Virus record (IMG/VR): IMGVR_UViG_3300046005_000547
Location: 62,001-126,000 of that record
Length of the DNA stretch: 64,000 nt
Reading direction: 5' to 3' (one strand)
Part shown: in pieces, positions 10,496 to 63,900 of the stretch
How the letters are laid out: each line of letters opens with the position of its first letter
Position numbering within the stretch: position 1 is the stretch's first letter
Program-made: the position numbers and the translations under genes
Notes under the pieces: model-generated
Told to the model about the DNA's origin: nothing
Database searches by the model: none
The model's input: the letters and a program-made list of their open reading frames with translations, nothing else

Positions 10496-10870
10496 ATCCC
10501 ATCCGCTGAAAAGTTGATGGGATTTTTATTGCGTAAAATATACATTCTAAATGATTCTTAAAACATCCATTATTTGTCCGTTAATCCATCTTAATGATAT
10601 ATGTCAATCAACTCTACAGGACTATTTGAATCCATCTTAAAACAACAAATAATTGGACAGGATTTAATGTTAACATCGAATCAATAAATTCACTGTATCG
10701 AGAACATCTTAAAGATTCATTATCGCTATTCTAGACATCGAGTTTGTAAATATCAACATAATAATACTTCTTGACTTTTCCAGCAAATTCCATTATAGTA
10801 GACTATGTCGACGTTTCAGTTAGTGTATATTACTACTTGATTATTCTTTTATATTACTACAAGATTCTTT
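10496..10870 (+). repeat. Dispersed ~470-bp family unit 1 (terminator, conserved boxes, promoter, start motif)
   Basis: catccattatttgtcc, caatcaactctacagg, aatccatcttaaa, TTGACT-N17-TATAGT, agactatgtcgacgtttcagtta and tatattactacaaga are shared with the 41.9-44.1 kb array. Confidence 0.9.
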
Positions 10871-10941: not shown

Positions 10942-11583
10942 ATGACATTATCGGCAGGAACACTTAGAGCAAGACTTGAATACAAACCAGAAGCTGGAGT
11001 ATTTGTTGGTAGATTAGATAGAGCCCGTAAGGGTACATTTGACAAGAAAGGATATATGGTAATCAATATTGATGGTAAGAAATATCTAGGTCATCGATTG
11101 GCATATCTTTACATGAATGGTAAATTTCCTGAACATGAAGTGAGTTTCAAAGATAAGAATACATCAAATTGTAAATGGGATAATCTAATTGAAGTTAATC
11201 CAACACAAAGAGCTTTATTATCTAAATCTGATACAAGTTCAAAATCTGGAGTAAAGGGATTGAATTTAGATAAACGAGGGTTCTACGTGGCAAGAGTGAC
11301 TCTTGATAAGAAACCCATTCAGAAATCATTCAAGTTGGACCAAAAAGATGAAGCTGTTAAATGGTTGGAATCAATCAGAGAATCTATTGGCGTCAATAAA
11401 GTGAAATCTAAAACCAACACTGGCGGGTATTATTATGACGTCAATCATAAATGGTTGAAAGATAAAGACAAACCAGTTATATTAAAGTTGACTCCAGTGG
11501 TTAAACAAGAACAACCGAAAGTTATAACAAAATTTGAATACGGACTTTCATTGTTATCTAATCTAGTGGAACAGTATTCGTAA
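10942..11583 (+). CDS. HNH_3-AP2 homing-endonuclease-derived protein with degenerate catalytic residues
   Basis: GYMVINIDGKKYLGHRLAYLYMNGKFP is the typical HNH_3 lead-in, but the usual IDH..DN reads VSF..NC; SKSGVKG...YVARV...EAVKW is AP2-like. Confidence 0.75.
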   Translation: MTLSAGTLRARLEYKPEAGVFVGRLDRARKGTFDKKGYMVINIDGKKYLGHRLAYLYMNGKFPEHEVSFKDKNTSNCKWDNLIEVNPTQRALLSKSDTSSKSGVKGLNLDKRGFYVARVTLDKKPIQKSFKLDQKDEAVKWLESIRESIGVNKVKSKTNTGGYYYDVNHKWLKDKDKPVILKLTPVVKQEQPKVITKFEYGLSLLSNLVEQYS

Positions 11584-11591
11584 TCTAAAGA

Positions 11592-11995
11592 ATCCCAGAC
11601 GTCTTAATTGACTCTGGGATTTTTATTGGATAAAATTTACATAATTGGTTTGTTGAACTGATACAGGAACATCCATTATTTGTCCAATAATCCATCCTAG
11701 TGGAATCTTTGTATAATACGTCAATCAACTCTACAGGATACATTGAATCCATCTTAAATCAACAATATGGGCGTTTTAAATTGAACATAATCGTCGAAAC
11801 TGTAAATTCAACATATCGAAAGAGACATCGAGTATTCTTAAGATGAAATAATGTATCGAGTCTGTAAATTACAATCATCGAGAAACTCCTTTCGAAATCG
11901 ATAAAAAGACAGTATACTAGACTATGTCGACGGTTTGAGTTAGTTCTATAGATTCAATTAAGTTTTCTTTTATATTACTTCAAGACTCTTTACAT
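11592..11995 (+). repeat. Dispersed ~470-bp family unit 2
   Basis: Terminator at 11592-11624, the same boxes, TTTCGA-N17-TATACT, agactatgtcgacggtttgagtta; abuts the gp17 stop. Confidence 0.9.
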
Positions 11996-12001
11996 AATAT
12001 A

Positions 12002-13981
12002 TTAGAAATGATATACTTCCACTTTATCTTCATCCAAACCGTCATTAATATATCCTACAGGTAACATTTGTTGGTCGATATAATCCATCTGTTGATTATA
12101 CAATTCCTTTCTAATGTCGACATCTCCCATATCCTTGATAAACGACGTTGAACATAACCAAGCAAATATAACACAACACATCACTAGATCGTCATGATTA
12201 GGTGGATCCGCAGAGTAACTACCTTGTCTTTCGATAAACACAGAAAACTCCTGTATAATATCAGGATCGAATATCAACAACTTAGATTCCTCAATCAACG
12301 ACTTCAATGTCATACATCCAATTCGTTTAATCTTCTTATCCATATTCAATCCCACTTCCATTGTTCCTGAAAATGATTCACATGGTATCTGTCCCTTTGG
12401 TGTCTTCTTAATGGAAATCAAATTCTCGTATTCCAAATCATCCTGAAGTATCTGTGCCACCTCCTTCGAACAATTTATCTCCACCAAAATGAATGCCTCG
12501 TTATACTCCATACCTATTTTATACAGGATATTTGGATATAACATAGGGCTAATCTTATTATCTCTATACTTACCTACAATCTTATACGGGAAATTCGTCA
12601 CATCGAAAATAACGGCTGATGAATAATCCCCACCAACACCCTTCGATGTATCCGCCGATATAATATACTGATGCCCTTCAATAGGTGCTTCCTGTATATC
12701 TAATCCATCTCTTGAATAAATGTATGGAATCGGTGACATCGATGAAATAGATGATGAATTTATAAGTGTGGCAGATGAACCTAAGAATTCACATAACACC
12801 TCTTGATTGAATTTAATCTCACCTAATATCTTTAACTGTTCATCTGCCCAAGTTGGATCTCGTTCTGGATGTTCGCTCCAATGTACAGTGAATGGTACAA
12901 ATCCGTTAGTTCCTTGTTGAGCATCATTCCAATATTTCCAAAAATGATTGTATCCTAACGGAGTTGACGTCAATACAACTTTTGTTTCTTTACCAGAGGA
13001 AATAGTAGGATACACAGAAGCGAAGAATGCGTCGGCGACGGCATTAGGAATAATTGCCGCTTCGTCCACGTATAAGAAATTACAATTATGTGAAATTACT
13101 CCATTAGAATAATAACAATGGACATCTTCAACAGTGTCTATATCGTAAACAGTTTCTGGTGTAATCTCAACAATAGATGAAATGATTTTATCCGATAGAA
13201 TATCATTTACATTTAAATCTTCGCATCTAATCCATTCTCCATTTATTTTAAATCTATGATCCAGTGTTGAATTGATATGAATGTCATCTGTAAATTTTAA
13301 TTGTAATAATCGTTCCGGCGTTCCTTGATTCAAAACTCCTTTAAAAGATTTGAAACCATAAGGAGTTTTGATTTTGAACGATTCTTTATATGAATTGTAT
13401 AATTCCTCTATAGAAATATCAAAAACATAATCCCCGTCCAAAATGGTAACAATGGTTTCTCCTGTTACACAAGACTTACCCCTGATTCCAGATGCAGAAG
13501 TTGCGGCAGTGAATATCTTAGAACCATTTTCTAAATGCATATCACCTTTGTTCAAGGATAGTACACCGTGTTGTAACCATTTCGGTAAAGATTCATACAT
13601 TAATTGTATACGACTTAGTACCTCTCTAGCAGCCGCGGCTTTATTTGCTAAAATGGCGGTAGTCTTATGGTTATTGAATAATGTGTAATGTAATATGTAT
13701 GCTGAAGTTACCGTAGTTTTTCCGAGCTGGCGCCCAATTAATGCTAAAACCTTGCGTTCACTGTGGAGTAAGCGAACATAATCCTTTTGAAACGGATACA
13801 TTTCAAAATTCACTAATCCCCTATCCAATGAAACAACTTTACAGTATGTAACAATAAAATAACAAGGATCTTGTTTGCATTTAATGTATTCTTCTATTTG
13901 TTCTTGAGTGAAATCAACTTTATATCCAGTTGGTTTTAAATTTTCATTACCATTATAACCAAGTAATTTATTATCTGCCAT
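12002..13981 (-). CDS. Terminase large subunit (gp17) with mini-intein
   Basis: YNGNENLK, EYIKCKQDP, Walker A GRQLGKTT, RGKS|CNFLYVDE Walker B, STPLG, FNQEVLCEFLGS, HDDLVM nuclease motif. Confidence 0.95.
   Translation of the reverse strand: MADNKLLGYNGNENLKPTGYKVDFTQEQIEEYIKCKQDPCYFIVTYCKVVSLDRGLVNFEMYPFQKDYVRLLHSERKVLALIGRQLGKTTVTSAYILHYTLFNNHKTTAILANKAAAAREVLSRIQLMYESLPKWLQHGVLSLNKGDMHLENGSKIFTAATSASGIRGKSCVTGETIVTILDGDYVFDISIEELYNSYKESFKIKTPYGFKSFKGVLNQGTPERLLQLKFTDDIHINSTLDHRFKINGEWIRCEDLNVNDILSDKIISSIVEITPETVYDIDTVEDVHCYYSNGVISHNCNFLYVDEAAIIPNAVADAFFASVYPTISSGKETKVVLTSTPLGYNHFWKYWNDAQQGTNGFVPFTVHWSEHPERDPTWADEQLKILGEIKFNQEVLCEFLGSSATLINSSSISSMSPIPYIYSRDGLDIQEAPIEGHQYIISADTSKGVGGDYSSAVIFDVTNFPYKIVGKYRDNKISPMLYPNILYKIGMEYNEAFILVEINCSKEVAQILQDDLEYENLISIKKTPKGQIPCESFSGTMEVGLNMDKKIKRIGCMTLKSLIEESKLLIFDPDIIQEFSVFIERQGSYSADPPNHDDLVMCCVIFAWLCSTSFIKDMGDVDIRKELYNQQMDYIDQQMLPVGYINDGLDEDKVEVYHF
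13085..13471 (-). mobile_element. Mini-intein (129 aa) in terminase, just before Walker B
   Basis: Begins CVTGET, block B STLDH, block F VYDI, ends ISHN followed by Cys. Confidence 0.9.
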
Positions 13982-22910: not shown

Positions 22911-24361
22911 TATTTTGAATCCTTACTTAGAACCAATCCTCTCCAAGTTGTACCACCATCACTAGTGAAAAATCCTAGAATATCTACTCCAGAAGTAATC
23001 AACGACGGAACAGTTCCTCCAGCCCATTTAATACCCGACCACCAAGTTATAATTGAACTCCCACCATTTGTTAATTCAATAACGAATGAACTCGTGTATC
23101 CAGATGTTGCTACATTACTAACAGTAAATGTAGTTGCACCAGAAATAGTTTTAGTGAAGAACGAACCTAAAGATAAATCGATATTGGCAGCAGCAACTGT
23201 GGTTTTAACGTCTCTGATACCAGAAAATGTATTGATACCAGAAAATGTATTATTTGATGTGAATAGATTAAACCAACTGTTATCCCCTTTCAAGAACGTA
23301 CTTGCACTTGGAGTTCCGGTAGAACCCATTCTGGATGGATTGATTGTTCCAGACAATAATGTAGCGGCAATGTTACCAGATGTTACAGTTCCTAATGTCG
23401 TTATACTAGCAGATCCAGCAGATGGAGCATAAGATGTCGATGACGTGTAAGCGGCTGTTCCTAATGCACCGCCAGAACCGATGTTTAATGTAGATCCATC
23501 TGTTCCAATTAAACCTAACGTGTTAGATACAGTTAATGTTTTTGATGTAGTGCCACCAGCAACTGAGAATCCAGTTGTAAAAGATGAAAATGAAACACCA
23601 TTAATAGTTTTACCAGTTAATGCTGAAGCAATGTTACTAGAAGCAATTGTTCCTGAAATTAAATTTCCTGGAATGTTACCAGTAGATACAGTTCCTAATG
23701 TCGTTATACTAGCAGATCCAGCAGATGGAGCATAAGATGTCGATGACGTGTAAGCGGCTGTTCCTAATGTACCACCAGAACCGATGTTTAATGTAGATCC
23801 ATCTGTTCCCATTAAACCTAACGTGTTAGATACAGTTAATGCTTTTGATGTATTTCCTCCGGAAACAGAGAATCCGGTTGTAAAAGATGAAAATGAAACA
23901 CCATTGATAGTTTTACCAGTTAATGCTGAAGCAATGTTACTAGAAGCAATTGTTCCTGAAATTAAATTTCCTGGAATGTTACCAGTAGATACAGTTCCTA
24001 ATGTAATTATACTAGCAGATCCTGTTGCTGGGGCATAAGATGTCGATGACGTGTAAGCGGCAGTCCCTAATGTACCACCAGAACCGATGTTTAATGTAGA
24101 TCCATCTGTTCCCATTAAACCTAGCGTGTTAGCTACAGTTAATGCTTTTGATGTATTTCCTCCGGAAACAGAGAATCCGGTTGTAAAAGATGAAAATGAA
24201 ACACCATTGATAGTTTTACCAGTTAATGCTGATGTGATATTATCAGAAGCAACTGTCCCTAATGTAATGTTTGATGCATTTAAAGAAGTTATACCAGAAC
24301 CATTACCAAGCAAAATCGAATTCGGAACTCCAATTTTATTTGTATTGCGTAAATAAGACAT
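22910..24361 (-). CDS. Gly/Ser/Thr-rich tail fibre protein with 101-aa tandem repeats
   Basis: Three near-identical repeats; C-terminal domain IDLSLGSFF...WAGGTVPSL...DILGFFTSDGGTTWRG. Confidence 0.75.
   Translation of the reverse strand: MSYLRNTNKIGVPNSILLGNGSGITSLNASNITLGTVASDNITSALTGKTINGVSFSSFTTGFSVSGGNTSKALTVANTLGLMGTDGSTLNIGSGGTLGTAAYTSSTSYAPATGSASIITLGTVSTGNIPGNLISGTIASSNIASALTGKTINGVSFSSFTTGFSVSGGNTSKALTVSNTLGLMGTDGSTLNIGSGGTLGTAAYTSSTSYAPSAGSASITTLGTVSTGNIPGNLISGTIASSNIASALTGKTINGVSFSSFTTGFSVAGGTTSKTLTVSNTLGLIGTDGSTLNIGSGGALGTAAYTSSTSYAPSAGSASITTLGTVTSGNIAATLLSGTINPSRMGSTGTPSASTFLKGDNSWFNLFTSNNTFSGINTFSGIRDVKTTVAAANIDLSLGSFFTKTISGATTFTVSNVATSGYTSSFVIELTNGGSSIITWWSGIKWAGGTVPSLITSGVDILGFFTSDGGTTWRGLVLSKDSK
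23380..24232 (-). repeat. 303-bp tandem repeat (about 3 copies) inside the fibre gene
   Basis: Equivalent positions at 23481, 23784 and 24087; nearly identical at DNA level. Confidence 0.9.
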
Positions 24362-41828: not shown

Positions 41829-42131
41829 ATGTTTATTCTGTATGTATTGTTTATATTATTTAATGGCATAGTGAAACGTCAATAATAATCCATCTATTAT
41901 CATCGTTAAATGTTTTTTAATGTTATGTTCAATCAACTCTACAGGATATTCTGAATCCATCTTATATTGGCGAATATCCATGTAGGATTAAATGTTAACA
42001 TCGAATCAACTATAATCATGTATCGAGGATGTCTTAATATAATCCTTTCGATGTATATTGTATCGAGTTTGATTATTGCAAGTTAAAGATTTCTCTTGAC
42101 TTTTCGAGGAAATATCGTTATAGTAGACTAT

Positions 42132-42302
42132 GTCGACGTTTCAGTTATTGCCTTTAAGGTCATTTTTATATTCTTTAATGTCTTCTATATTACTTCAAGA
42201 CTCTTTATCGACAATAATATACTCTATTCTAAACAATAATTCATCATTAAAATCTCTGCGTCTCAGATCCCGATAGAATGTAAAAGTTCTGTTGGGATTT
42301 TT
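42132..42302 (+). ncRNA. Predicted ~170-nt small RNA, unit 3
   Basis: TTGACT-N17-TATAGT promoter, conserved 5' end, terminator at 42267-42302; transcription is inferred. Confidence 0.45.
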
Positions 42303-42604
42303 ATTGGATAAAAATTTACATTATATTCAATTCCATCTTAACATCAAACCATCCATTATTTGTCCAATAATCCACCTTAATGGAATCTTTCCAATATACA
42401 TCAATCAACTCTACAGGATATAACCATTCCATCTTAAAATCCAAATATGGATTTCTATATTAAACAAGAACATCGAAGTTGTAAATTCAACATATCGAAA
42501 GAGTCTTAAAGATGGTGTTCGATAACATTAGACATCGAACTTGTAATAATCATGTATCGAGAAACTCCTTTCGAAATGATAAAAAAGACAGTATACTAGA
42601 CTAT

Positions 42605-42778
42605 GTCGATGTTTCAGTTATTGCCTTTACTTCAATTTTAATATTCTTCTATATCATTATTAGATTCTTTATAGACATTACTACAAGAACATAATATTGT
42701 CTTTATCGAGTAATTATTCATCATAAAATCTCTGCTCCTCAGATCCTGACATGAACTAAACATTATGTCAGGATTTTT
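42605..42778 (+). ncRNA. Predicted ~175-nt small RNA, unit 4
   Basis: TTTCGA-N17-TATACT promoter, terminator at 42743-42778; transcription is inferred. Confidence 0.45.
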
Positions 42779-43077
42779 ATTGGATAAAATTTACATAATC
42801 GGTTTGTTGAACTGATACTGGAACAACCATTATTTGTCCAATAATCCATCCTAGTGGAATCTTCTTGTAATATGTCAATCAACTCTACGAGATATATTGA
42901 TTCCATCTTAAAACAACAATATGGATGTCTATATTAAACAAGAACATCGAAGTTGTAAATTCAACATATCGAAAGACTATTGATAACATCGAAACGGAAT
43001 CTTAGACATCGAGTATGTAAACAACAACGATTAGAAACTCCTTTCGAAATGTCAGAAACTCGGATATACTAGACTAT

Positions 43078-43244
43078 GTCGACGTTTCAGTTAGTGTATC
43101 TATTGTTTTTCTAATATTCTTTATTGTCTTCTATATTACTACAAGACATTATCCTATTCTTTATCGAGTATATTCTATACAATAATCCAACATTAAAATC
43201 TCTGACATTCAGATCCCACCAGATTTATTCTGAGTGGGATTTTT
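43078..43244 (+). ncRNA. Predicted ~165-nt small RNA, unit 5
   Basis: TTTCGA-N17-TATACT promoter, terminator at 43213-43244; transcription is inferred. Confidence 0.45.
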
Positions 43245-43545
43245 ATTGTTTAAAATTTACAATATAACAATCCTATGTTGAATCATTAACATCCATTATT
43301 TGTCCGTTAATCCATCCTAGTGGAATCTTTGTATAATATGTCAATCAACTCTCTGCATGATATTCTGAATCCATCTTAAAACAACAAATATCCACGTTAA
43401 ATCAAACGTAATCATCGAAACAATAAACATCATGTATCGAAAGAGTCTTAAGAACATCGAAACAGAATATCGTTCATCGAGTCTGTATATTACAGGTTAA
43501 GAATACTCCTTTCGAAATGGTAGAAAATGTAGTATAGTAGACTAT

Positions 43546-43706
43546 GTCGACGTTTCAGTTATTACCTTTACTTTCATTAAGTGTTCTTCTATATTACTAC
43601 AAGACTCTTTATAGAGTATAATAATGTCTTTATCGAGCAATTATTCAACATTAAAATCTCTGTCATTCATATCCCGATGAGAACCAATCATTTCATCGGG
43701 ATTTTT
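43546..43706 (+). ncRNA. Predicted ~160-nt small RNA, unit 6
   Basis: TTTCGA-N17-TATAGT promoter, terminator at 43671-43706; transcription is inferred. Confidence 0.45.
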
Positions 43707-44099
43707 ATTGGATTCAATTTACAATATATCAGTTCTGTATTAGTTTGATAACATCCATTATTTTGCTCGTTAATGGACTCTAATGGAACGTTTCCAATAT
43801 ACATCAATCAACTCTACAGGATATAACCAATCCATCTTAAATCAACAATATAGACTGTTAAATTAAACATTAACATCGGAATCAATTATAATCATGTATC
43901 GAAAGAGTCTTAAGAACATCGAAGGATAATCTTTAACATCGAATGTGTAAATTACAATCATCTAGAAACTCCTTTCGAAATCGATAAAAAGACAGTATAC
44001 TAGACTATGTCGACGGTTTGAGTTAGTTCTATTAATATGTTTTAGTATTTTTCTATATTACTTCAAGACTCTTTATAGACTTTATTCTTTTATTATTCC

Positions 44100-44127
44100 T
44101 TTCGATTAACATTTTATTCACTATAAT
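44100..44127 (+). promoter_or_regulatory. Phage promoter TTTCGA-N16-TATAAT for ligase
   Basis: tttcga at 44100, tataat at 44122 followed by aga. Confidence 0.7.
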
Positions 44128-44164
44128 AGAACTCGTTACTTAACTTTATACAGGAAACTTTAAT

Positions 44165-45541
44165 ATGTCAGTCACTAGAATCATCAATGAATTACGTTCA
44201 ACCAATTCAAGAAATGACAAAATCGCCATCTTAACAGAAAACAAAGATAATGAAACGTTAAAACGAGTATTGGTTCTTGCGTTAGATCCAACAATTCAAT
44301 TCTATCAACGTAAGATTCCATCATTCACATTTTCTGGTAATCTTATTGAATTCAACAACGCATTAGATCTTCTGTCAACATTATCCAGTAGAGAATTAAC
44401 GGGAAATGCTGCTGTTGAATTCTTATCAACATTATTATCTGATGTTTCAAACGATGAAGCTGAAATCATCAAATTGATTATCCAGAAAGACTTGAAATGT
44501 GGAGTCAATGAATCAACTGTTAATAAAGTTTGGGGTAACTTAATTCCTGATTACCCTTATCAAAGATGTTCGTCTATCTCTAGTGTCAAATTAGATAAAT
44601 GGAATTTACAGGATGGAATCTTCTCTCAATTGAAAGCAGATGCTCTATACTGTAACCTTAATCATGATGAATTTGGCGATGTTAAGATGTTATCTCGAAA
44701 TGGTAAAGAATTCCCATTAGACAAATTCCAGGACATTGTATACCAAACCAAATTACATTTACAGACCAACACTCAGACACAAGGTGAGTTGATGGTTAAA
44801 CGAGATGGGATTATCTTACCGCGCGAACAATCTAATGGATCTATCAATAGTGTTTCAAAAGGTGGAGATTTTGGTGTTGGTGAAGAACCTTATTTTGTTG
44901 TATGGGATCAAGTTCCATTAGATGAAGTTGGATCTAAATGTTCAATCAAAATTCCATACAAAGATAGATTCGTTACATTAACAAGTCAAGTATCTAATGT
45001 AAATGGTTGTATCGAATTGATTGAAACAAGAATTGTACATTCTATCGATGAGATGATTGAACATTTTGAACATAATCTGAAATTGGGATTAGAAGGTTCT
45101 GTTGTCAAAAATCCAAATGGATTCTGGGAAGATAAGACAAGCAAAGACCAAGTGAAATTGAAATTGGAAGTTGATTCAATTGAACTTGAAGTCATTGGAT
45201 TCAAAGAAGGTAAAGGTAAGAACGCAAATACATTTGGTTCAATTATCTGTCAATCATCTTGCGGTCAATTGAAAGTTGCTATCTCGGGAATGCCTGACAA
45301 CAAACGAATGGAAATCCATAAGAAACGTGATGAAATGATTGGTTCCATTATTTCTGTCAAAGCAAATGCAATCACAGAACCAAATAAAGGTAATCCATTG
45401 TATTCTTTATTCTTGCCTAGATTCGAAGAAGAACGATATGATAAGAACACTGCTGATAGTCTTGATGAAATTCAATTGAAATTTGAAAGTGCTATCTCAG
45501 ACATTAAAGATAAATTGTTGAAACAATATAAAGGTAAATGA
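44165..45541 (+). CDS. ATP-dependent DNA ligase (gp30)
   Basis: QKDLKCG, motif I QLKADA, SRNGK, GELMV, EGSVVK, KLKLE, SLFLPRF. Confidence 0.9.
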   Translation: MSVTRIINELRSTNSRNDKIAILTENKDNETLKRVLVLALDPTIQFYQRKIPSFTFSGNLIEFNNALDLLSTLSSRELTGNAAVEFLSTLLSDVSNDEAEIIKLIIQKDLKCGVNESTVNKVWGNLIPDYPYQRCSSISSVKLDKWNLQDGIFSQLKADALYCNLNHDEFGDVKMLSRNGKEFPLDKFQDIVYQTKLHLQTNTQTQGELMVKRDGIILPREQSNGSINSVSKGGDFGVGEEPYFVVWDQVPLDEVGSKCSIKIPYKDRFVTLTSQVSNVNGCIELIETRIVHSIDEMIEHFEHNLKLGLEGSVVKNPNGFWEDKTSKDQVKLKLEVDSIELEVIGFKEGKGKNANTFGSIICQSSCGQLKVAISGMPDNKRMEIHKKRDEMIGSIISVKANAITEPNKGNPLYSLFLPRFEEERYDKNTADSLDEIQLKFESAISDIKDKLLKQYKGK

Positions 45542-60923: not shown

Positions 60924-63900
60924 CTATCCATTAAAATTAAATCTGTTTTGAAAATAATTCAATACAGTGTTATCATCGTTCTTAACTGTCTTGGAGATAA
61001 CAGTCGTTGAATTATTGTTAACATTGGTTGGCGCGTTGACTATATTATTACCATTTGATACATTATTTTTATTGGTATTCTCTAATCTAGCGGTTTCCGT
61101 TTTCGCTGAATTTTCATATAATGCGTTAGAAATATCTCTTATCGGTTTTTCTGGCGTTTTGAAAAGAGCTTGCCCAATAGGTTCAATCTTAGTGACATCT
61201 ATTGGTAACTTTGTTTCAATAGACATATTAGATAATGTATCTGTTATGCTTGAATTAACAATTGGTATTATCTTAGAGGGTTCAATACGTTCTCCGTTAA
61301 TTGTAACATCTGGTATTATATTATTAAGGAGTTCTTCTGCTTTATTATCAATAGAAGAAGGAATATCCATTATCGGATTAATAATATCATCAATTGGTTT
61401 TGTAACAGATTGAATGTTTTGATTGACGATATTCTTCACTTCATTTATCGGATTACCAATCAACGGGTCTATTTGATTTGCTAATTGAACTACTTCATCT
61501 ATTGGATTATCATTTATTGTTACAACAGGTTCAGGAATAGATACTTCATTTGGTGGTAATGGAGTTTCCACCGTAACAGGAACTTGTTGAATCACACCCA
61601 CCGGTTTAACAATAGGTTCTTCTGATTTCAAATTTGGAAATTCAGATTCAACAGAAGGTATTGTTGATTCATTTATTGTTACAACAGGTTCAGGAATAGA
61701 TACTTCATTTGGTGGTAATGGAGTTTCTTTAGATTGTTCCTGTTTAATTTGTTCTACTGGTTTAGATTGAACATCATTTAACGGAGCTTTGCTAAGAGAT
61801 GTTAAATCGATTTCTGGTTTAGAGAATTCAGGAACAGGTTCTATCTTGTTTTCTATTTTAACAGGTTCAATCTTTGGTATTTCTTTATTTTCAGGTTCTA
61901 CTGGTTTTGGTTCTTCCGATTTACCGTTAATGAATTTCGTTGCTTCTTCTTCGACATTCTTTTTGATTTCGGTCATTCGTTCACCAACCAATGGATCTGA
62001 CATTGGTGAAATACCATACACATCTTCATAAACATCATTTGCCAATAATGCGATTGCCGCAGGTACAGCAGTGGCAACTGAACCTAAACCAGATACGGCA
62101 GCCAATCCTGCTCCAGCGATATCTCCTTTTACCAATCTACTGATACCTTCCCCAACACCTAATGCAGCACCAATCAATGGAATAGATTTACCCAACATCC
62201 CGCCCATGGCAGCAGGTAATCTTTTGGCAATAGAGGTTCCAATCAATGCAGAAGCACTTCCTTTCAATTTATTTCCAACACCGCCCAATACTTTACCGCC
62301 AACAGATTTAACTACTCCACCCATCTTACCAACAACTGTTGATTCCTTTACTCCATTAACAACATTAGACGCTAAATTTCCAATAGAAGAACCAGCAACC
62401 ATGGCAGCAGTAGCTCCACCAATCGCCTTTACTCCAGTTGATAATGGTTTGAATTTACCTCCGATTTTGGAGGCAATATCTTTTGTTGATTTTCCAAAGG
62501 ATTTAGCTTTGTTCTTTAATTTACCACCTTCTTTCTTAGCGTTACCACCAAACAACCCACCCAATAATGATGTATCGGATTCTTCTTTCTCATTGACCCC
62601 AAATTTACCCATTTTCAACAATTTGAAAATTTCTGTTTGAACATTCAATTGATTTTGTAATACATCAAATGTTTTGGATTTCTGTAAATTATCTTCAATT
62701 TGAGATTCGGAAACTTCATTCGATATATTAGTTGATTCTTTAGAGGTTTCTTTAATTGAATCAGATAACGATTTGATTTCATCTTGTGTATTGGAAACGA
62801 CAGTTGTTATCTTAGAGGACTCTTTAATTGAATCAGATAACGATTTGATTTCATCTTGTGTATTGGAAACGACAGTTGTTATCTTAGAGGTTTCTTTAAT
62901 TGAATCAGATAATGATTTATTTTCATCTTGAACTTTAGATTCAACAGTTGTTATCTTAGAGGACTCTTTAATTGAATCAGATAATGATTTGATTTCATCT
63001 TGAACTTTAGATTCAACAGTTTCCTTTTTAATTGGAGATTCAACTGGAGTCGATTGAGATGGAATATCTTTAACTGGCTCTTCTTTGACAAATGTTTTAT
63101 CCGTATCCTCTATCTGTTTTCTTAGAGAGGAAAGTTCTTCAGATAATGTTTTAAACACTTCATTGGATTCATCCGTTTTTGGTAAATCTTTAAATGTATT
63201 AAGTTTATCAAACAATTCATTGTATGATTGTTTCATATTCAATAACATTTTGGATTCTTTAATTAGATCTTTCTCAACATCAGAACGTTTTTTATCTTTC
63301 AATAATTCTGGATTTTGTTCTATTGCTTGTTGTGCATATTCTAAATGAGTTTCTTTTACATTTTGTGATTGTAATAATACATCTTTCAAACCAACAATGT
63401 CCGCAAGTTTCTGTATATTTTCATTGGACCCAAACGACAATCCTTTTGTACCAATTTGTTTTATCACAGAAGAGGTTTTGAATTCATTATATCTTGGATC
63501 TTCTTTTACATTATACTTTGGGTTGATTCGTTTAGCTTCTTTAATGTAATCTTTGAACGATTCTCTATTGGATAGATATTTTCCTAATTTTGAATCTTCT
63601 TTTACACCAATAACATTTGTTGCGAATTTCTTTAATGAAGAAAGATTACCAATTGCTGATTTTTTAAACAATGATGAGATTACATTATCCGATTTATCAA
63701 CATCATATTTACCAGAAGGTTTATTTGTTGGTTGTTCTTTTGGTTTTGATTCTGGTGCGTTATCTTTCAAAACGGGTTTCGATTCAATTCTATCTTTAAT
63801 CTCAGATAACAAATCTATCATCTTCATGGAATTGTTGAATTGTTTCTCTTCCGCGAACCTTTCTTCAAATTGAATTTCTTTATCGGATTTACCGCCTGAA

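What the first reader, a model, noticed from the sequence alone, without database searches (positions are those of the whole stretch)
42947..43550. Precisely phased TCGA ladder upstream of each repeat promoter
Seen: TCGA starts at 42947, 42969, 42989, 43009, 43044 and 43079 in unit 5, and at 43415, 43437, 43457, 43477, 43512 and 43547 in unit 6. Both give spacings 22, 20, 20, 35, 35 although the intervening bases differ. Unit 7 gives 23, 20, 20, 36, 35 (its first site is TCGG). Inference: spacing of about two helical turns puts sites on one DNA face, as for iterons or cooperative activator sites. TCGA is also the core of the phage TTTCGA promoter element, so the array could load or titrate the same factor.
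Basis: partly seen in the sequence, partly recalled or inferred. Interest (0 to 1): 0.65.

Follow-up and report, generated by a model that had tools for sequence, protein, structure and literature searches.

The report
Phased promoter-box ladder in phage repeats
An uncultured lake phage related to T4 carries about two dozen repeated promoter-terminator cassettes, each preceded by a row of short TCGA-core sites. The sites sit one DNA turn (or a whole number of turns) apart, look like flipped copies of the phage's own promoter box, and are most likely docking sites for a still unknown regulatory protein.

Summary
The window lies in a 234.7-kb freshwater T4-like phage. A ~470-bp cassette occurs 24 times in 7 arrays, and at least 24 more times in a 249-kb relative.

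Each cassette has this order:
- intrinsic terminator
- conserved block
- TCGA ladder
- promoter (TTTCGA or TTGACT, 17 bp, TATAcT)
- invariant start box
- ~170-nt AU-rich non-coding transcript

Evidence that the ladder is under constraint:
- TCGA density is 36.5 per kb in ladders against 2.7 per kb elsewhere.
- The TCGA columns of the two anchor sites are 99% conserved; the other ladder columns are 65% conserved.
- Site number varies from 1 to 5, but distances from the -70 site fall at 20, 30, 40, 51, 61, 71 and 81 bp, a period of about 10.25 bp.
- Inverted sites are shifted by 5 bp, which keeps the centre of an asymmetric ATCGAAAG-type motif in phase.
- The sites are inverted copies of the -35 box (TCTTTCGATg) of 22 other promoters in the genome that have no ladder.

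Best reading, at confidence 0.5: one-face binding sites for an unidentified protein that regulates PeSL-like early-promoter cassettes. No binding, transcript or methylation data exist. No MotA, AsiA or region-4 sigma is encoded. Rivals are origin iterons, slippage relics and methylation targets.

The parts
41880..44160 (+). It lies in the divergent gap between the baseplate gene block (minus strand) and the DNA ligase operon (plus strand).
42944..43016 (+). Unit 5 ladder: four direct ATCGA(A/G) sites, with TCGA at 42947, 42969, 42989 and 43009.
43412..43484 (+). Unit 6 ladder: four direct sites, with TCGA at 43415, 43437, 43457 and 43477.
43873..43946 (+). Unit 7 ladder: a degenerate first site (TCGG at 43876), then TCGA at 43899, 43919 and 43939.
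41998..42070 (+). Unit 3 ladder: TCGA at 42001, 42023, 42048 (inverted, TTTCGAT) and 42063.
42470..42561 (+). Unit 4 ladder: TCGA at 42473, 42495, 42519 (inverted), 42535 and 42557.
43037..43087 (+). Unit 5 promoter: -35 TTTCGA at 43042-43047, a 17-bp spacer, -10 TATACT at 43065-43070, and the invariant start box TAGACTATGTCGA at 43070-43082.
43505..43555 (+). Unit 6 promoter: -35 at 43510-43515, -10 TATAGT at 43533-43538, start box at 43538-43550.
42091..42141 (+). Unit 3 promoter, the canonical sigma-70 variant: TTGACT at 42096-42101, 17-bp spacer, TATAGT at 42119-42124. TCGA is shifted to the spacer at 42104.
43213..43246 (+). Unit 5 intrinsic terminator (G+C stem plus T run). It ends a ~170-nt AU-rich transcript with no conserved ORF and no conserved fold.
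43671..43708 (+). Unit 6 intrinsic terminator.
42822..42925 (.). Conserved ~100-bp block between the previous terminator and the ladder (unit 5 copy). Function unknown; no frame stays open across the copies.
44100..44127 (+). Ladder-less promoter of the general class (TTTCGA, 16 bp, TATAAT, then AGA), 38 bp before the DNA ligase gene at 44165-45541.
10520..10830 (+). Solitary unit 1, with a TTGACT-type promoter at 10771-10799. It drives an HNH endonuclease gene at 10942-11583.
11590..11950 (+). Solitary unit 2. Its promoter (11890-11930) points antisense into the 3' end of the large terminase gene.

Best explanation
The ladder is a cis-regulatory array. It consists of 1-5 copies of a short asymmetric motif with core ATCGAA (full form about cATCGAAAGAg), placed at whole helical turns upstream of a repeated early-type promoter so that all sites face one side of the DNA.

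The motif is the inverted, and occasionally direct, form of the phage's own extended -35 box, TCTTTCGATg. The most likely mechanism is cooperative binding of a sequence-specific protein along that face. The protein could be phage-encoded or a host factor and is not identified. It would contact RNA polymerase at the adjacent promoter, or occlude the similar boxes at -35 and at the start site. Either way it would switch these very strong promoter-terminator cassettes on or off in time.

The cassettes resemble the PeSL (promoter-early stem-loop) repeats of T4-like phages, but are enlarged, mostly empty of genes, and stacked in tandem at the heads of transcription units.

Shown here: the anatomy, the conservation, the phasing and the motif kinship. 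Inferred: that a protein binds, the sign of regulation, and the promoter's timing.
For: - 24 cassettes in the genome and at least 24 in a ~70%-identical relative share the layout.
- TCGA columns are 98.7% conserved against 64.6% for other ladder columns. TCGA is 13-fold enriched in ladders.
- The proximal site lies 34-36 bp from the -35 TCGA in most units of both phages, while upstream site number varies.
- Distances quantise at about 10.25 bp over at least 18 layouts. Inverted sites shift by 5 bp, which keeps the motif centre in phase.
- Ladder flanks match the -35 box of 22 ladder-less promoters.
- CTTAAG is rare in the genome (19 copies; about 77 expected from base composition, my own arithmetic), yet 12 of the 19 lie in ladder sites.
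- Five arrays sit before orthologous genes in both phages.
- The transcribed part has no conserved ORF or fold, so the constraint is on the DNA.
- No A-tract phasing is present that would give static curvature.
Against: - No binding protein is identified. MotA, AsiA and sigma region 4 are absent from the genome, and only a gp55-like late sigma is present.
- There are no RNA, footprint or methylation data.
- Units within one genome evolve in concert, so the 48 copies are not independent.
- The 10-bp quantisation could partly come from slippage between ~10/20-bp sub-modules (TCGA ... CTTA) rather than from selection for helical phase.
- Only two phage lineages carry the system, so co-variation of ladder and -35 box cannot be tested.
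Confidence: 0.5

Rival explanations
1. Neutral by-product. The rungs are slipped or duplicated copies of the -35 box, as described for degraded PeSLs. They would be kept alike by gene conversion among cassettes, with no function of their own.
For: - The sites are clearly promoter-box derivatives.
- Site number varies from 1 to 5 per unit.
- Units within a genome resemble each other more than units across genomes.
- PeSL papers report multiple degraded -35/-10 copies from recombinational slippage (PMC4122927).
- A contig in run X4 lacks one unit.
Against: - Gene conversion would homogenise flanks as much as cores, yet cores are 99% conserved and flanks 65%.
- The same two anchor sites persist in two phages whose units differ by about 30%.
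- Layouts differ but all keep helical phase, including the 5-bp compensation of inverted sites.
- A CTTAAG word that is avoided genome-wide is retained in the ladder.
Confidence: 0.15
2. Replication-origin module. The rungs would be iterons for an initiator, next to a strong promoter and an AT-rich transcribed stretch that forms an R-loop. This is the logic of T4 oriF/oriG (promoter plus unwinding element), T4 oriE and lambda ori (iterons).
For: - Direct repeats lie about 20-22 bp apart.
- The transcribed body is 23% G+C, unstructured and non-coding.
- The arrays lie at the heads of divergent transcription blocks.
- That T4 origins combine a promoter with an unwinding element is from my own knowledge.
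Against: - 24 copies in tandem stacks is far more than any known origin set.
- The tight, fixed coupling of the proximal site to the -35 box fits a transcription role better.
- The sites share the -35 box motif of 22 ordinary promoters.
- No initiator gene was recognised next to any array.
Confidence: 0.12
3. Signals for the opposite strand. Read on the minus strand, the inverted boxes are forward TTTCGAT boxes. They could be -35 elements of promoters driving an antisense RNA or a small ORF in the conserved upstream block.
For: - On the minus strand the type-I site reads as a near-perfect general-class -35 box.
- Some units have minus-strand promoter-like pairs.
- A 42-55-codon frame starting MDS.YPVELID is open in some copies.
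Against: - No -10 element sits at 16-17 bp from any inverted box in either phage; the hexamer there is TTCGAT or unrelated (my reading of the sequences).
- The minus-strand promoter-like pairs differ between units and do not exceed shuffles by much: 31 found against 19.4 +/- 4.3 expected.
- The frame is broken by stops in most copies, and I saw the same on reading one copy from the relative phage.
- The open copies have no family match.
Confidence: 0.07
4. Epigenetic or restriction-related sites. TCGA and CTTAAG are palindromes, and a phage or host methyltransferase or nuclease could mark or cut them to time promoter use.
For: - Both conserved cores are palindromic restriction-type words.
- The phage encodes an N6/N4 methyltransferase.
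- The genome shows strong palindrome avoidance, so restriction pressure is real.
Against: - TCGA is not avoided genome-wide: 218 observed against 183 expected in the window.
- There is no credible TaqI-type target-recognition domain: 16.6 bits against a cut-off of 26.5.
- The conserved motif is asymmetric and longer than TCGA, and its orientation matters for position. A palindromic enzyme site would not need that.
Confidence: 0.06

Closest known systems
PeSL (promoter-early stem-loop) cassettes of T4-like phages (Arbiol et al. 2010, PMC2839356; Comeau et al. 2014, PMC4122927)
   Same: - A composite terminator plus sigma-70-type early promoter, repeated dozens of times in intergenic DNA of a T4-like myovirus.
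- Some copies flank a mobile-type ORF; here an HNH endonuclease lies between units 1 and 2.
- Copy number differs between relatives (G000 against G001; the X4 contig with one unit fewer).
   Different: - In PeSLs, as I recall, the element is short (about 100 bp or less), and the stem-loop sits just upstream of the promoter, which runs straight into a Shine-Dalgarno site and gene.
- Here the unit is about 470 bp.
- The terminator is about 270 bp upstream, separated from the promoter by a conserved block and the phased TCGA ladder.
- Most units are followed by a non-coding 170-nt transcript and stand in tandem arrays of up to five.
- The -35 is TTTCGA. PeSL papers describe only an AT-rich region upstream.
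T4 middle promoters (MotA box plus sigma appropriation by AsiA)
   Same: A phage-specific conserved box replaces the canonical -35 in about 50 promoters that keep a sigma-70-type -10. A few units carry both a canonical TTGACT and the phage box 11 bp from the -10.
   Different: - No MotA or AsiA homologue is present.
- The box is TTTCGA at the true -35 position with a 16-17-bp spacer, not TGCTT at -30.
- T4 has no upstream multi-site ladder.
Iterons of lambda ori and of plasmid origins (F, P1, RK2, R6K)
   Same: Three to five direct repeats about two helical turns apart, next to AT-rich DNA and a promoter.
   Different: - The cores are only about 7-10 bp.
- Orientation can flip.
- There are 24 or more copies per genome.
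- Each is tied to a promoter at a fixed distance.
- No initiator gene was found.
Multi-site upstream activator arrays, such as the FIS sites at rrnB P1, or repressor stacks on phage early promoters, such as SPO1 TF1 and phi29 p4/p6 (from my own knowledge)
   Same: Several sites on one DNA face upstream of an unusually strong promoter. Boxes overlapping -35 and +1 would allow repression.
   Different: The factor is unknown, the motif is unrelated to those systems, and the sites copy the promoter's own -35 box.

Membership tests
PeSL cassette | Sigma-70-like early promoter (-35, ~17 bp, -10) | tested here: met
   TTTCGA or TTGACT, 17 bp, TATA(C/G)T in all 24 units.
PeSL cassette | Stem-loop or terminator immediately upstream of the promoter | tested here: not met
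   The terminator lies about 270 bp upstream. A conserved block and the ladder lie between it and the promoter.
PeSL cassette | Promoter runs into a Shine-Dalgarno site and the start codon of a downstream ORF | tested here: not met
   Only the last unit of an array or a solitary unit precedes a gene. The others give a ~170-nt non-coding RNA ending at a terminator.
PeSL cassette | Many dispersed copies, associated with indels between related genomes | tested here: met
   24 copies in 7 arrays. Unit numbers differ between G000 and G001 at orthologous loci. An X4 contig joins 42453 to 42928, one unit fewer.
MotA-dependent middle promoter | MotA box (TGCTT) centred at -30 | tested here: not met
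   The box is TTTCGA at -35.
MotA-dependent middle promoter | MotA and AsiA genes in the phage | tested here: not met
   No match to PF09158 or PF09010 at E <= 1 in the complete genome.
Origin iterons | Array of direct repeats about 17-22 bp apart | tested here: inconclusive
   Spacings of 20-22 bp exist, but sites can be inverted, number 1-5, and the core is only about 7-10 bp.
Origin iterons | Cognate initiator gene nearby, and initiator binding | not testable with these tools
   Neighbouring genes are baseplate, ligase, HNH and unknown small ORFs. Binding needs experiments.
Origin iterons | Adjacent AT-rich unwinding element | tested here: inconclusive
   The transcribed body is 23% G+C, against 28% for non-ORF DNA. 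This is suggestive only.
Transcription-factor operator array | Sites conserved above flanks, fixed register to the promoter, helical phasing | tested here: met
Transcription-factor operator array | Demonstrated occupancy by a protein | not testable with these tools
   No host culture and no RNA or footprint data.

The most novel reading that the evidence does not exclude
The seven arrays are hubs that capture whatever reads the TTTCGA box: the host polymerase itself, or an unrecognised phage protein acting like MotA. Up to about 90 phased decoy boxes plus 24 strong promoters would concentrate or titrate that factor and so time the ~50 TTTCGA promoters of the genome. Alternatively, the same cassettes double as distributed R-loop replication origins with iterons. 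Either would be a genome-wide regulatory device not described for T4-like phages.
Probability: 0.15. Interest if true: 0.8.

Novelty: new variant of a known kind. Interest (0 to 1): 0.55.

Why it matters
T4-like phages outside the enterobacterial group lack MotA and AsiA, and how they order early and middle transcription is largely unknown. This one offers a clean, highly repeated cis-architecture:
- a phage-specific -35 box in about 50 promoters;
- in 24 of them, a helically phased stack of inverted copies of that box.

The architecture predicts a specific DNA-binding regulator and gives precise constructs to test (site deletions, 5-bp versus 10-bp inserts). It also extends the PeSL idea. Promoter-terminator cassettes can be large, gene-free and stacked in tandem at conserved loci, so they may have a function beyond shuffling genes.

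Tried and rejected
- **Coding potential.** The leaderless ATG at the start box meets a stop after 4-48 codons, at different places in different units (my reading of the sequences). The minus-strand frame MDS.YPVELID is broken in most copies and has no PHROG match.
- **Structured RNA.** There is no Rfam match at E <= 1 and no tRNA or tmRNA. RNAalifold finds only the terminator hairpin, and the transcript body has mean z = -0.4.
- **Minus-strand promoters.** No conserved -10 partner exists.
- **Static curvature.** AA and AAA periodicity is not above the intergenic control. AA/TT at 10 bp is only slightly higher, 0.33 against 0.22.
- **Known box readers.** MotA, AsiA and sigma region 4 are absent.
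- **TaqI-type methylase.** The only hit is sub-threshold.
- **Cultured relatives.** Megablast against phage records found nothing. The first 50 kb of Methylophilales phage Melnitz has no TTTCGA promoter class and no TCGA cluster.
- **More relatives.**
  - Pattern scans of IMG/VR returned only the same phage, the one relative G001 and chance hits.
One chance hit came from a human-gut metagenome assembly and was not examined beyond the automatic filter.
  - The ligase-based locus search found only a near-identical fragment.
- **Reads.** Only DNA contigs of lake metagenomes exist, and they break inside the repeats. They give no transcript ends, no strand and no methylation information.

Full report
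**1. What the window is**

The window is bases 62,001-126,000 of a 234,735-bp IMG/VR virus record with direct terminal repeats. It has 32% G+C. It encodes T4-type baseplate proteins (gp25- and gp6-like), an ATP-dependent DNA ligase, a gp55-like late sigma factor and a T4-type large terminase. The nearest cultured relatives are Methylophilales and Pelagibacter myophages, at about 40% amino-acid identity. The DNA occurs in lake-water metagenomes, and no RNA runs were found. The host is unknown.

**2. The observation**

The window holds seven copies of an exact 13-base word, TAGACTATGTCGA: two solitary copies at 10799 and 11918, and five in tandem at 42124-44001. The genome holds 24 copies in seven arrays. 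BLAST with one unit finds further partial copies.

Anchored on that word, TCGA starts recur at about -132, -110, -90 (or -85/-86), -70, -35 (or -29) and 0.

Between units 5 and 6, the 16 ladder TCGA bases are all identical while only 55% of the other ladder bases are. P is about 8e-5.

Ladders carry 36.5 TCGA per kb against 2.7 per kb elsewhere. In ladders 79% of CpG lies in TCGA, against 13% elsewhere. ACATCGAA is 55-fold enriched in units.

**3. Anatomy of the unit**

Each unit of about 470 bp runs in this order:
- An intrinsic terminator, a G+C stem followed by a T run.
- A conserved block of about 100 bp.
- The ladder.
- A promoter with TTTCGA at the -35 position, a 17-bp spacer and TATACT or TATAGT.
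- The invariant start box.
- A transcript body of about 130 nt at 23% G+C, then the next terminator.

In five of the seven arrays, one unit has a canonical TTGACT at -35, with TCGA moved 6 bp into the spacer.

The transcribed part has no conserved ORF, no Rfam match and no fold beyond the terminator. The last unit of an array, or a solitary unit, drives real genes: the ligase operon, an HNH endonuclease and others. Arrays sit at the heads of transcription blocks.

**4. A second genome**

IMG/VR record 3300046008_000242 (249 kb, handle G001) carries the same cassettes at about 70% identity, again in seven clusters. Five arrays precede orthologous genes in the two phages.

In G001 the rungs lie at about -130, -105 (inverted), -90, -69, -35/-29 and 0.

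In a joint 48-unit alignment, the TCGA columns of the two anchor sites are 98.7% conserved against 64.6% for the other ladder columns. Permutation p = 0.001.

Between the two genome consensuses, ATCGAAAGAGTCTTAA and ACATCGA.T.TGTAA are identical. The rungs are therefore longer than four bases.

**5. Phasing**

The proximal site lies at -69 to -71 in 44 of 48 units, 34-36 bp from the -35 TCGA. Upstream of it, the number of sites varies from 1 to 5.

Direct-orientation sites fall at 19-21, 28-31, 39-42, 51, 58-62, 69-75 and 81 bp from the proximal site. That is 2 to 8 turns of about 10.25 bp. Rayleigh R is 0.81 over all sites and 0.66 on the 22 distinct distances, which I estimate at p of about 7e-5.

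Inverted sites (TTCGAT) fall at 15-16, 36, 45-47 and 55-57 bp, always 5 bp short of a whole turn. If the recognised element is asymmetric, about ATCGAAAGAG with its centre 2.5 bp to the 3' side of the TCGA centre, then flipping it moves TCGA by 5 bp while the centre stays in phase. That is what is seen.

The spacer TCGA at -29 (AATCGAT, direct) is 41 bp, or four turns, from the proximal site. The -35 box, read as an inverted site, is in phase within 1-2 bp.

One caveat applies. The ladder has an internal rhythm of about 10/20 bp (TCGA, then CTTA about 10-12 bp later). Slippage could therefore produce quantised indels without selection.

**6. Kinship with the promoter box**

The genome has 22 exact TTTCGA-N16-TATAAT sites. 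Nearly all are intergenic and lie 50-100 bp before ORFs. They share an extended consensus: an A-rich stretch, TC, TTTCGAtg, an A-rich spacer, TATAAT, then AGA. These promoters have no upstream TCGA. G001 uses the same class.

The reverse complement of the box, cATCGAAAGA, is the ladder's type-I site. The direct third sites (TCCTTTCGATGTA) are the box itself.

Conditional on TCGA, ladder flanks score far higher on the box matrix than 613 background TCGA sites do (p = 2e-11). The copies are paralogous, so this p-value overstates independence.

The start box (AGACTATGTCGA) also resembles the inverted type-I site (AGACTCTTTCGA).

CTTAAG, which is part of the type-I site, is rare in the genome: 19 copies, with about 77 expected from base composition by my own arithmetic. 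Twelve of the 19 are in ladders. This sits against a background of strong palindrome avoidance.

**7. Mechanism**

The constraint acts on DNA, not on a protein or an RNA fold. It is tied in register to a promoter, keeps one helical face, tolerates flips that preserve the motif centre, and uses the promoter's own box. This is the signature of a protein that binds several sites on one face and communicates with RNA polymerase.

Boxes overlapping -35 and +1 would allow repression, that is, shut-off of very strong early promoters. The -70 position would equally suit activation. I cannot tell which applies.

The phage has no MotA, no AsiA and no sigma with region 4. Canonical sigma-70 promoters are few outside the units. 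The TTTCGA class may therefore be read by host polymerase directly, much as T4 early promoters use TTTAC (for the PST/T4 consensus). In that case the ladder protein would be a separate factor.

**8. Rivals**

The rivals considered are a neutral slippage relic, origin iterons with an R-loop unit, minus-strand signals, methylation or restriction targets, and static curvature. Each is weighed in the rival list. None explains core-over-flank conservation, fixed register and phase-preserving flips together. Static curvature is disfavoured.

**9. Comparison with known systems**

The cassettes work like PeSLs (PMC2839356, PMC4122927) but fail two defining features: the stem-loop does not abut the promoter, and the promoter does not feed a gene. 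They also add an upstream phased array that PeSL descriptions lack. I therefore file this as a new variant of a known kind, not a member.

**10. Limits**

- Only two lineages carry the system.
- Units evolve in concert within a genome.
- The transcription start is inferred from the -10 position.
- There are no expression, binding or modification data.
- The short-read contigs break in the repeats. They showed only that one related population has an array one unit shorter.

Noticed in passing
window 1579, 3004, 44100, 52409, 53306, 59018 (and 16 more in the genome): A second, highly uniform promoter class: A-rich stretch, TC, TTTCGAtg, 16-bp spacer, TATAAT, then AGA(t)TTCAAGTT. It sits before early or replication-type genes, without any ladder.
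   Followed up: yes
window 12002-13981 (-): The large terminase gene has its N-terminal domain split in two stretches, with a weak intein-splicing hit (21.8 bits, below the cut-off). It may carry a mini-intein. The promoter of unit 2 fires antisense into its 3' end.
   Followed up: partly
window 10942-11583 (+): An HNH endonuclease gene lies between two cassettes in direct orientation. This is the arrangement proposed for PeSL-mediated mobile cassettes.
   Followed up: partly
whole genome (G000): Strong avoidance of many palindromes. Observed against expected from base composition: TGATCA 0 of ~80, AGTACT 1, AAGCTT 2, ACTAGT 4. In the window, GATC is 118 against 348 by a Markov estimate. This suggests heavy restriction pressure. 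TCGA is not avoided.
   Followed up: partly
window 42453 | 42928 (run X4, contig record 27): A lake-metagenome contig joins these two points directly, giving an array with one cassette fewer in a related population.
   Followed up: no
window 23369-24260 and 62740-63002: Two in-gene tandem repeats: 303 bp x 2.9 copies at 94% identity, and 72 bp x 3.7 copies at 90% identity. They were not examined.
   Followed up: no
genome 141186, 141646, 163064 (outside the window): In units whose third rung is in direct orientation, that box lies 16 bp before TATGAT. This gives a second promoter-like site about 50 bp upstream of the main promoter.
   Followed up: partly
genome 24510-25547 (-), outside the window: An N6/N4 DNA methyltransferase match whose reading frame shows several stops in the six-frame search. 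Its specificity and intactness are unknown.
   Followed up: no
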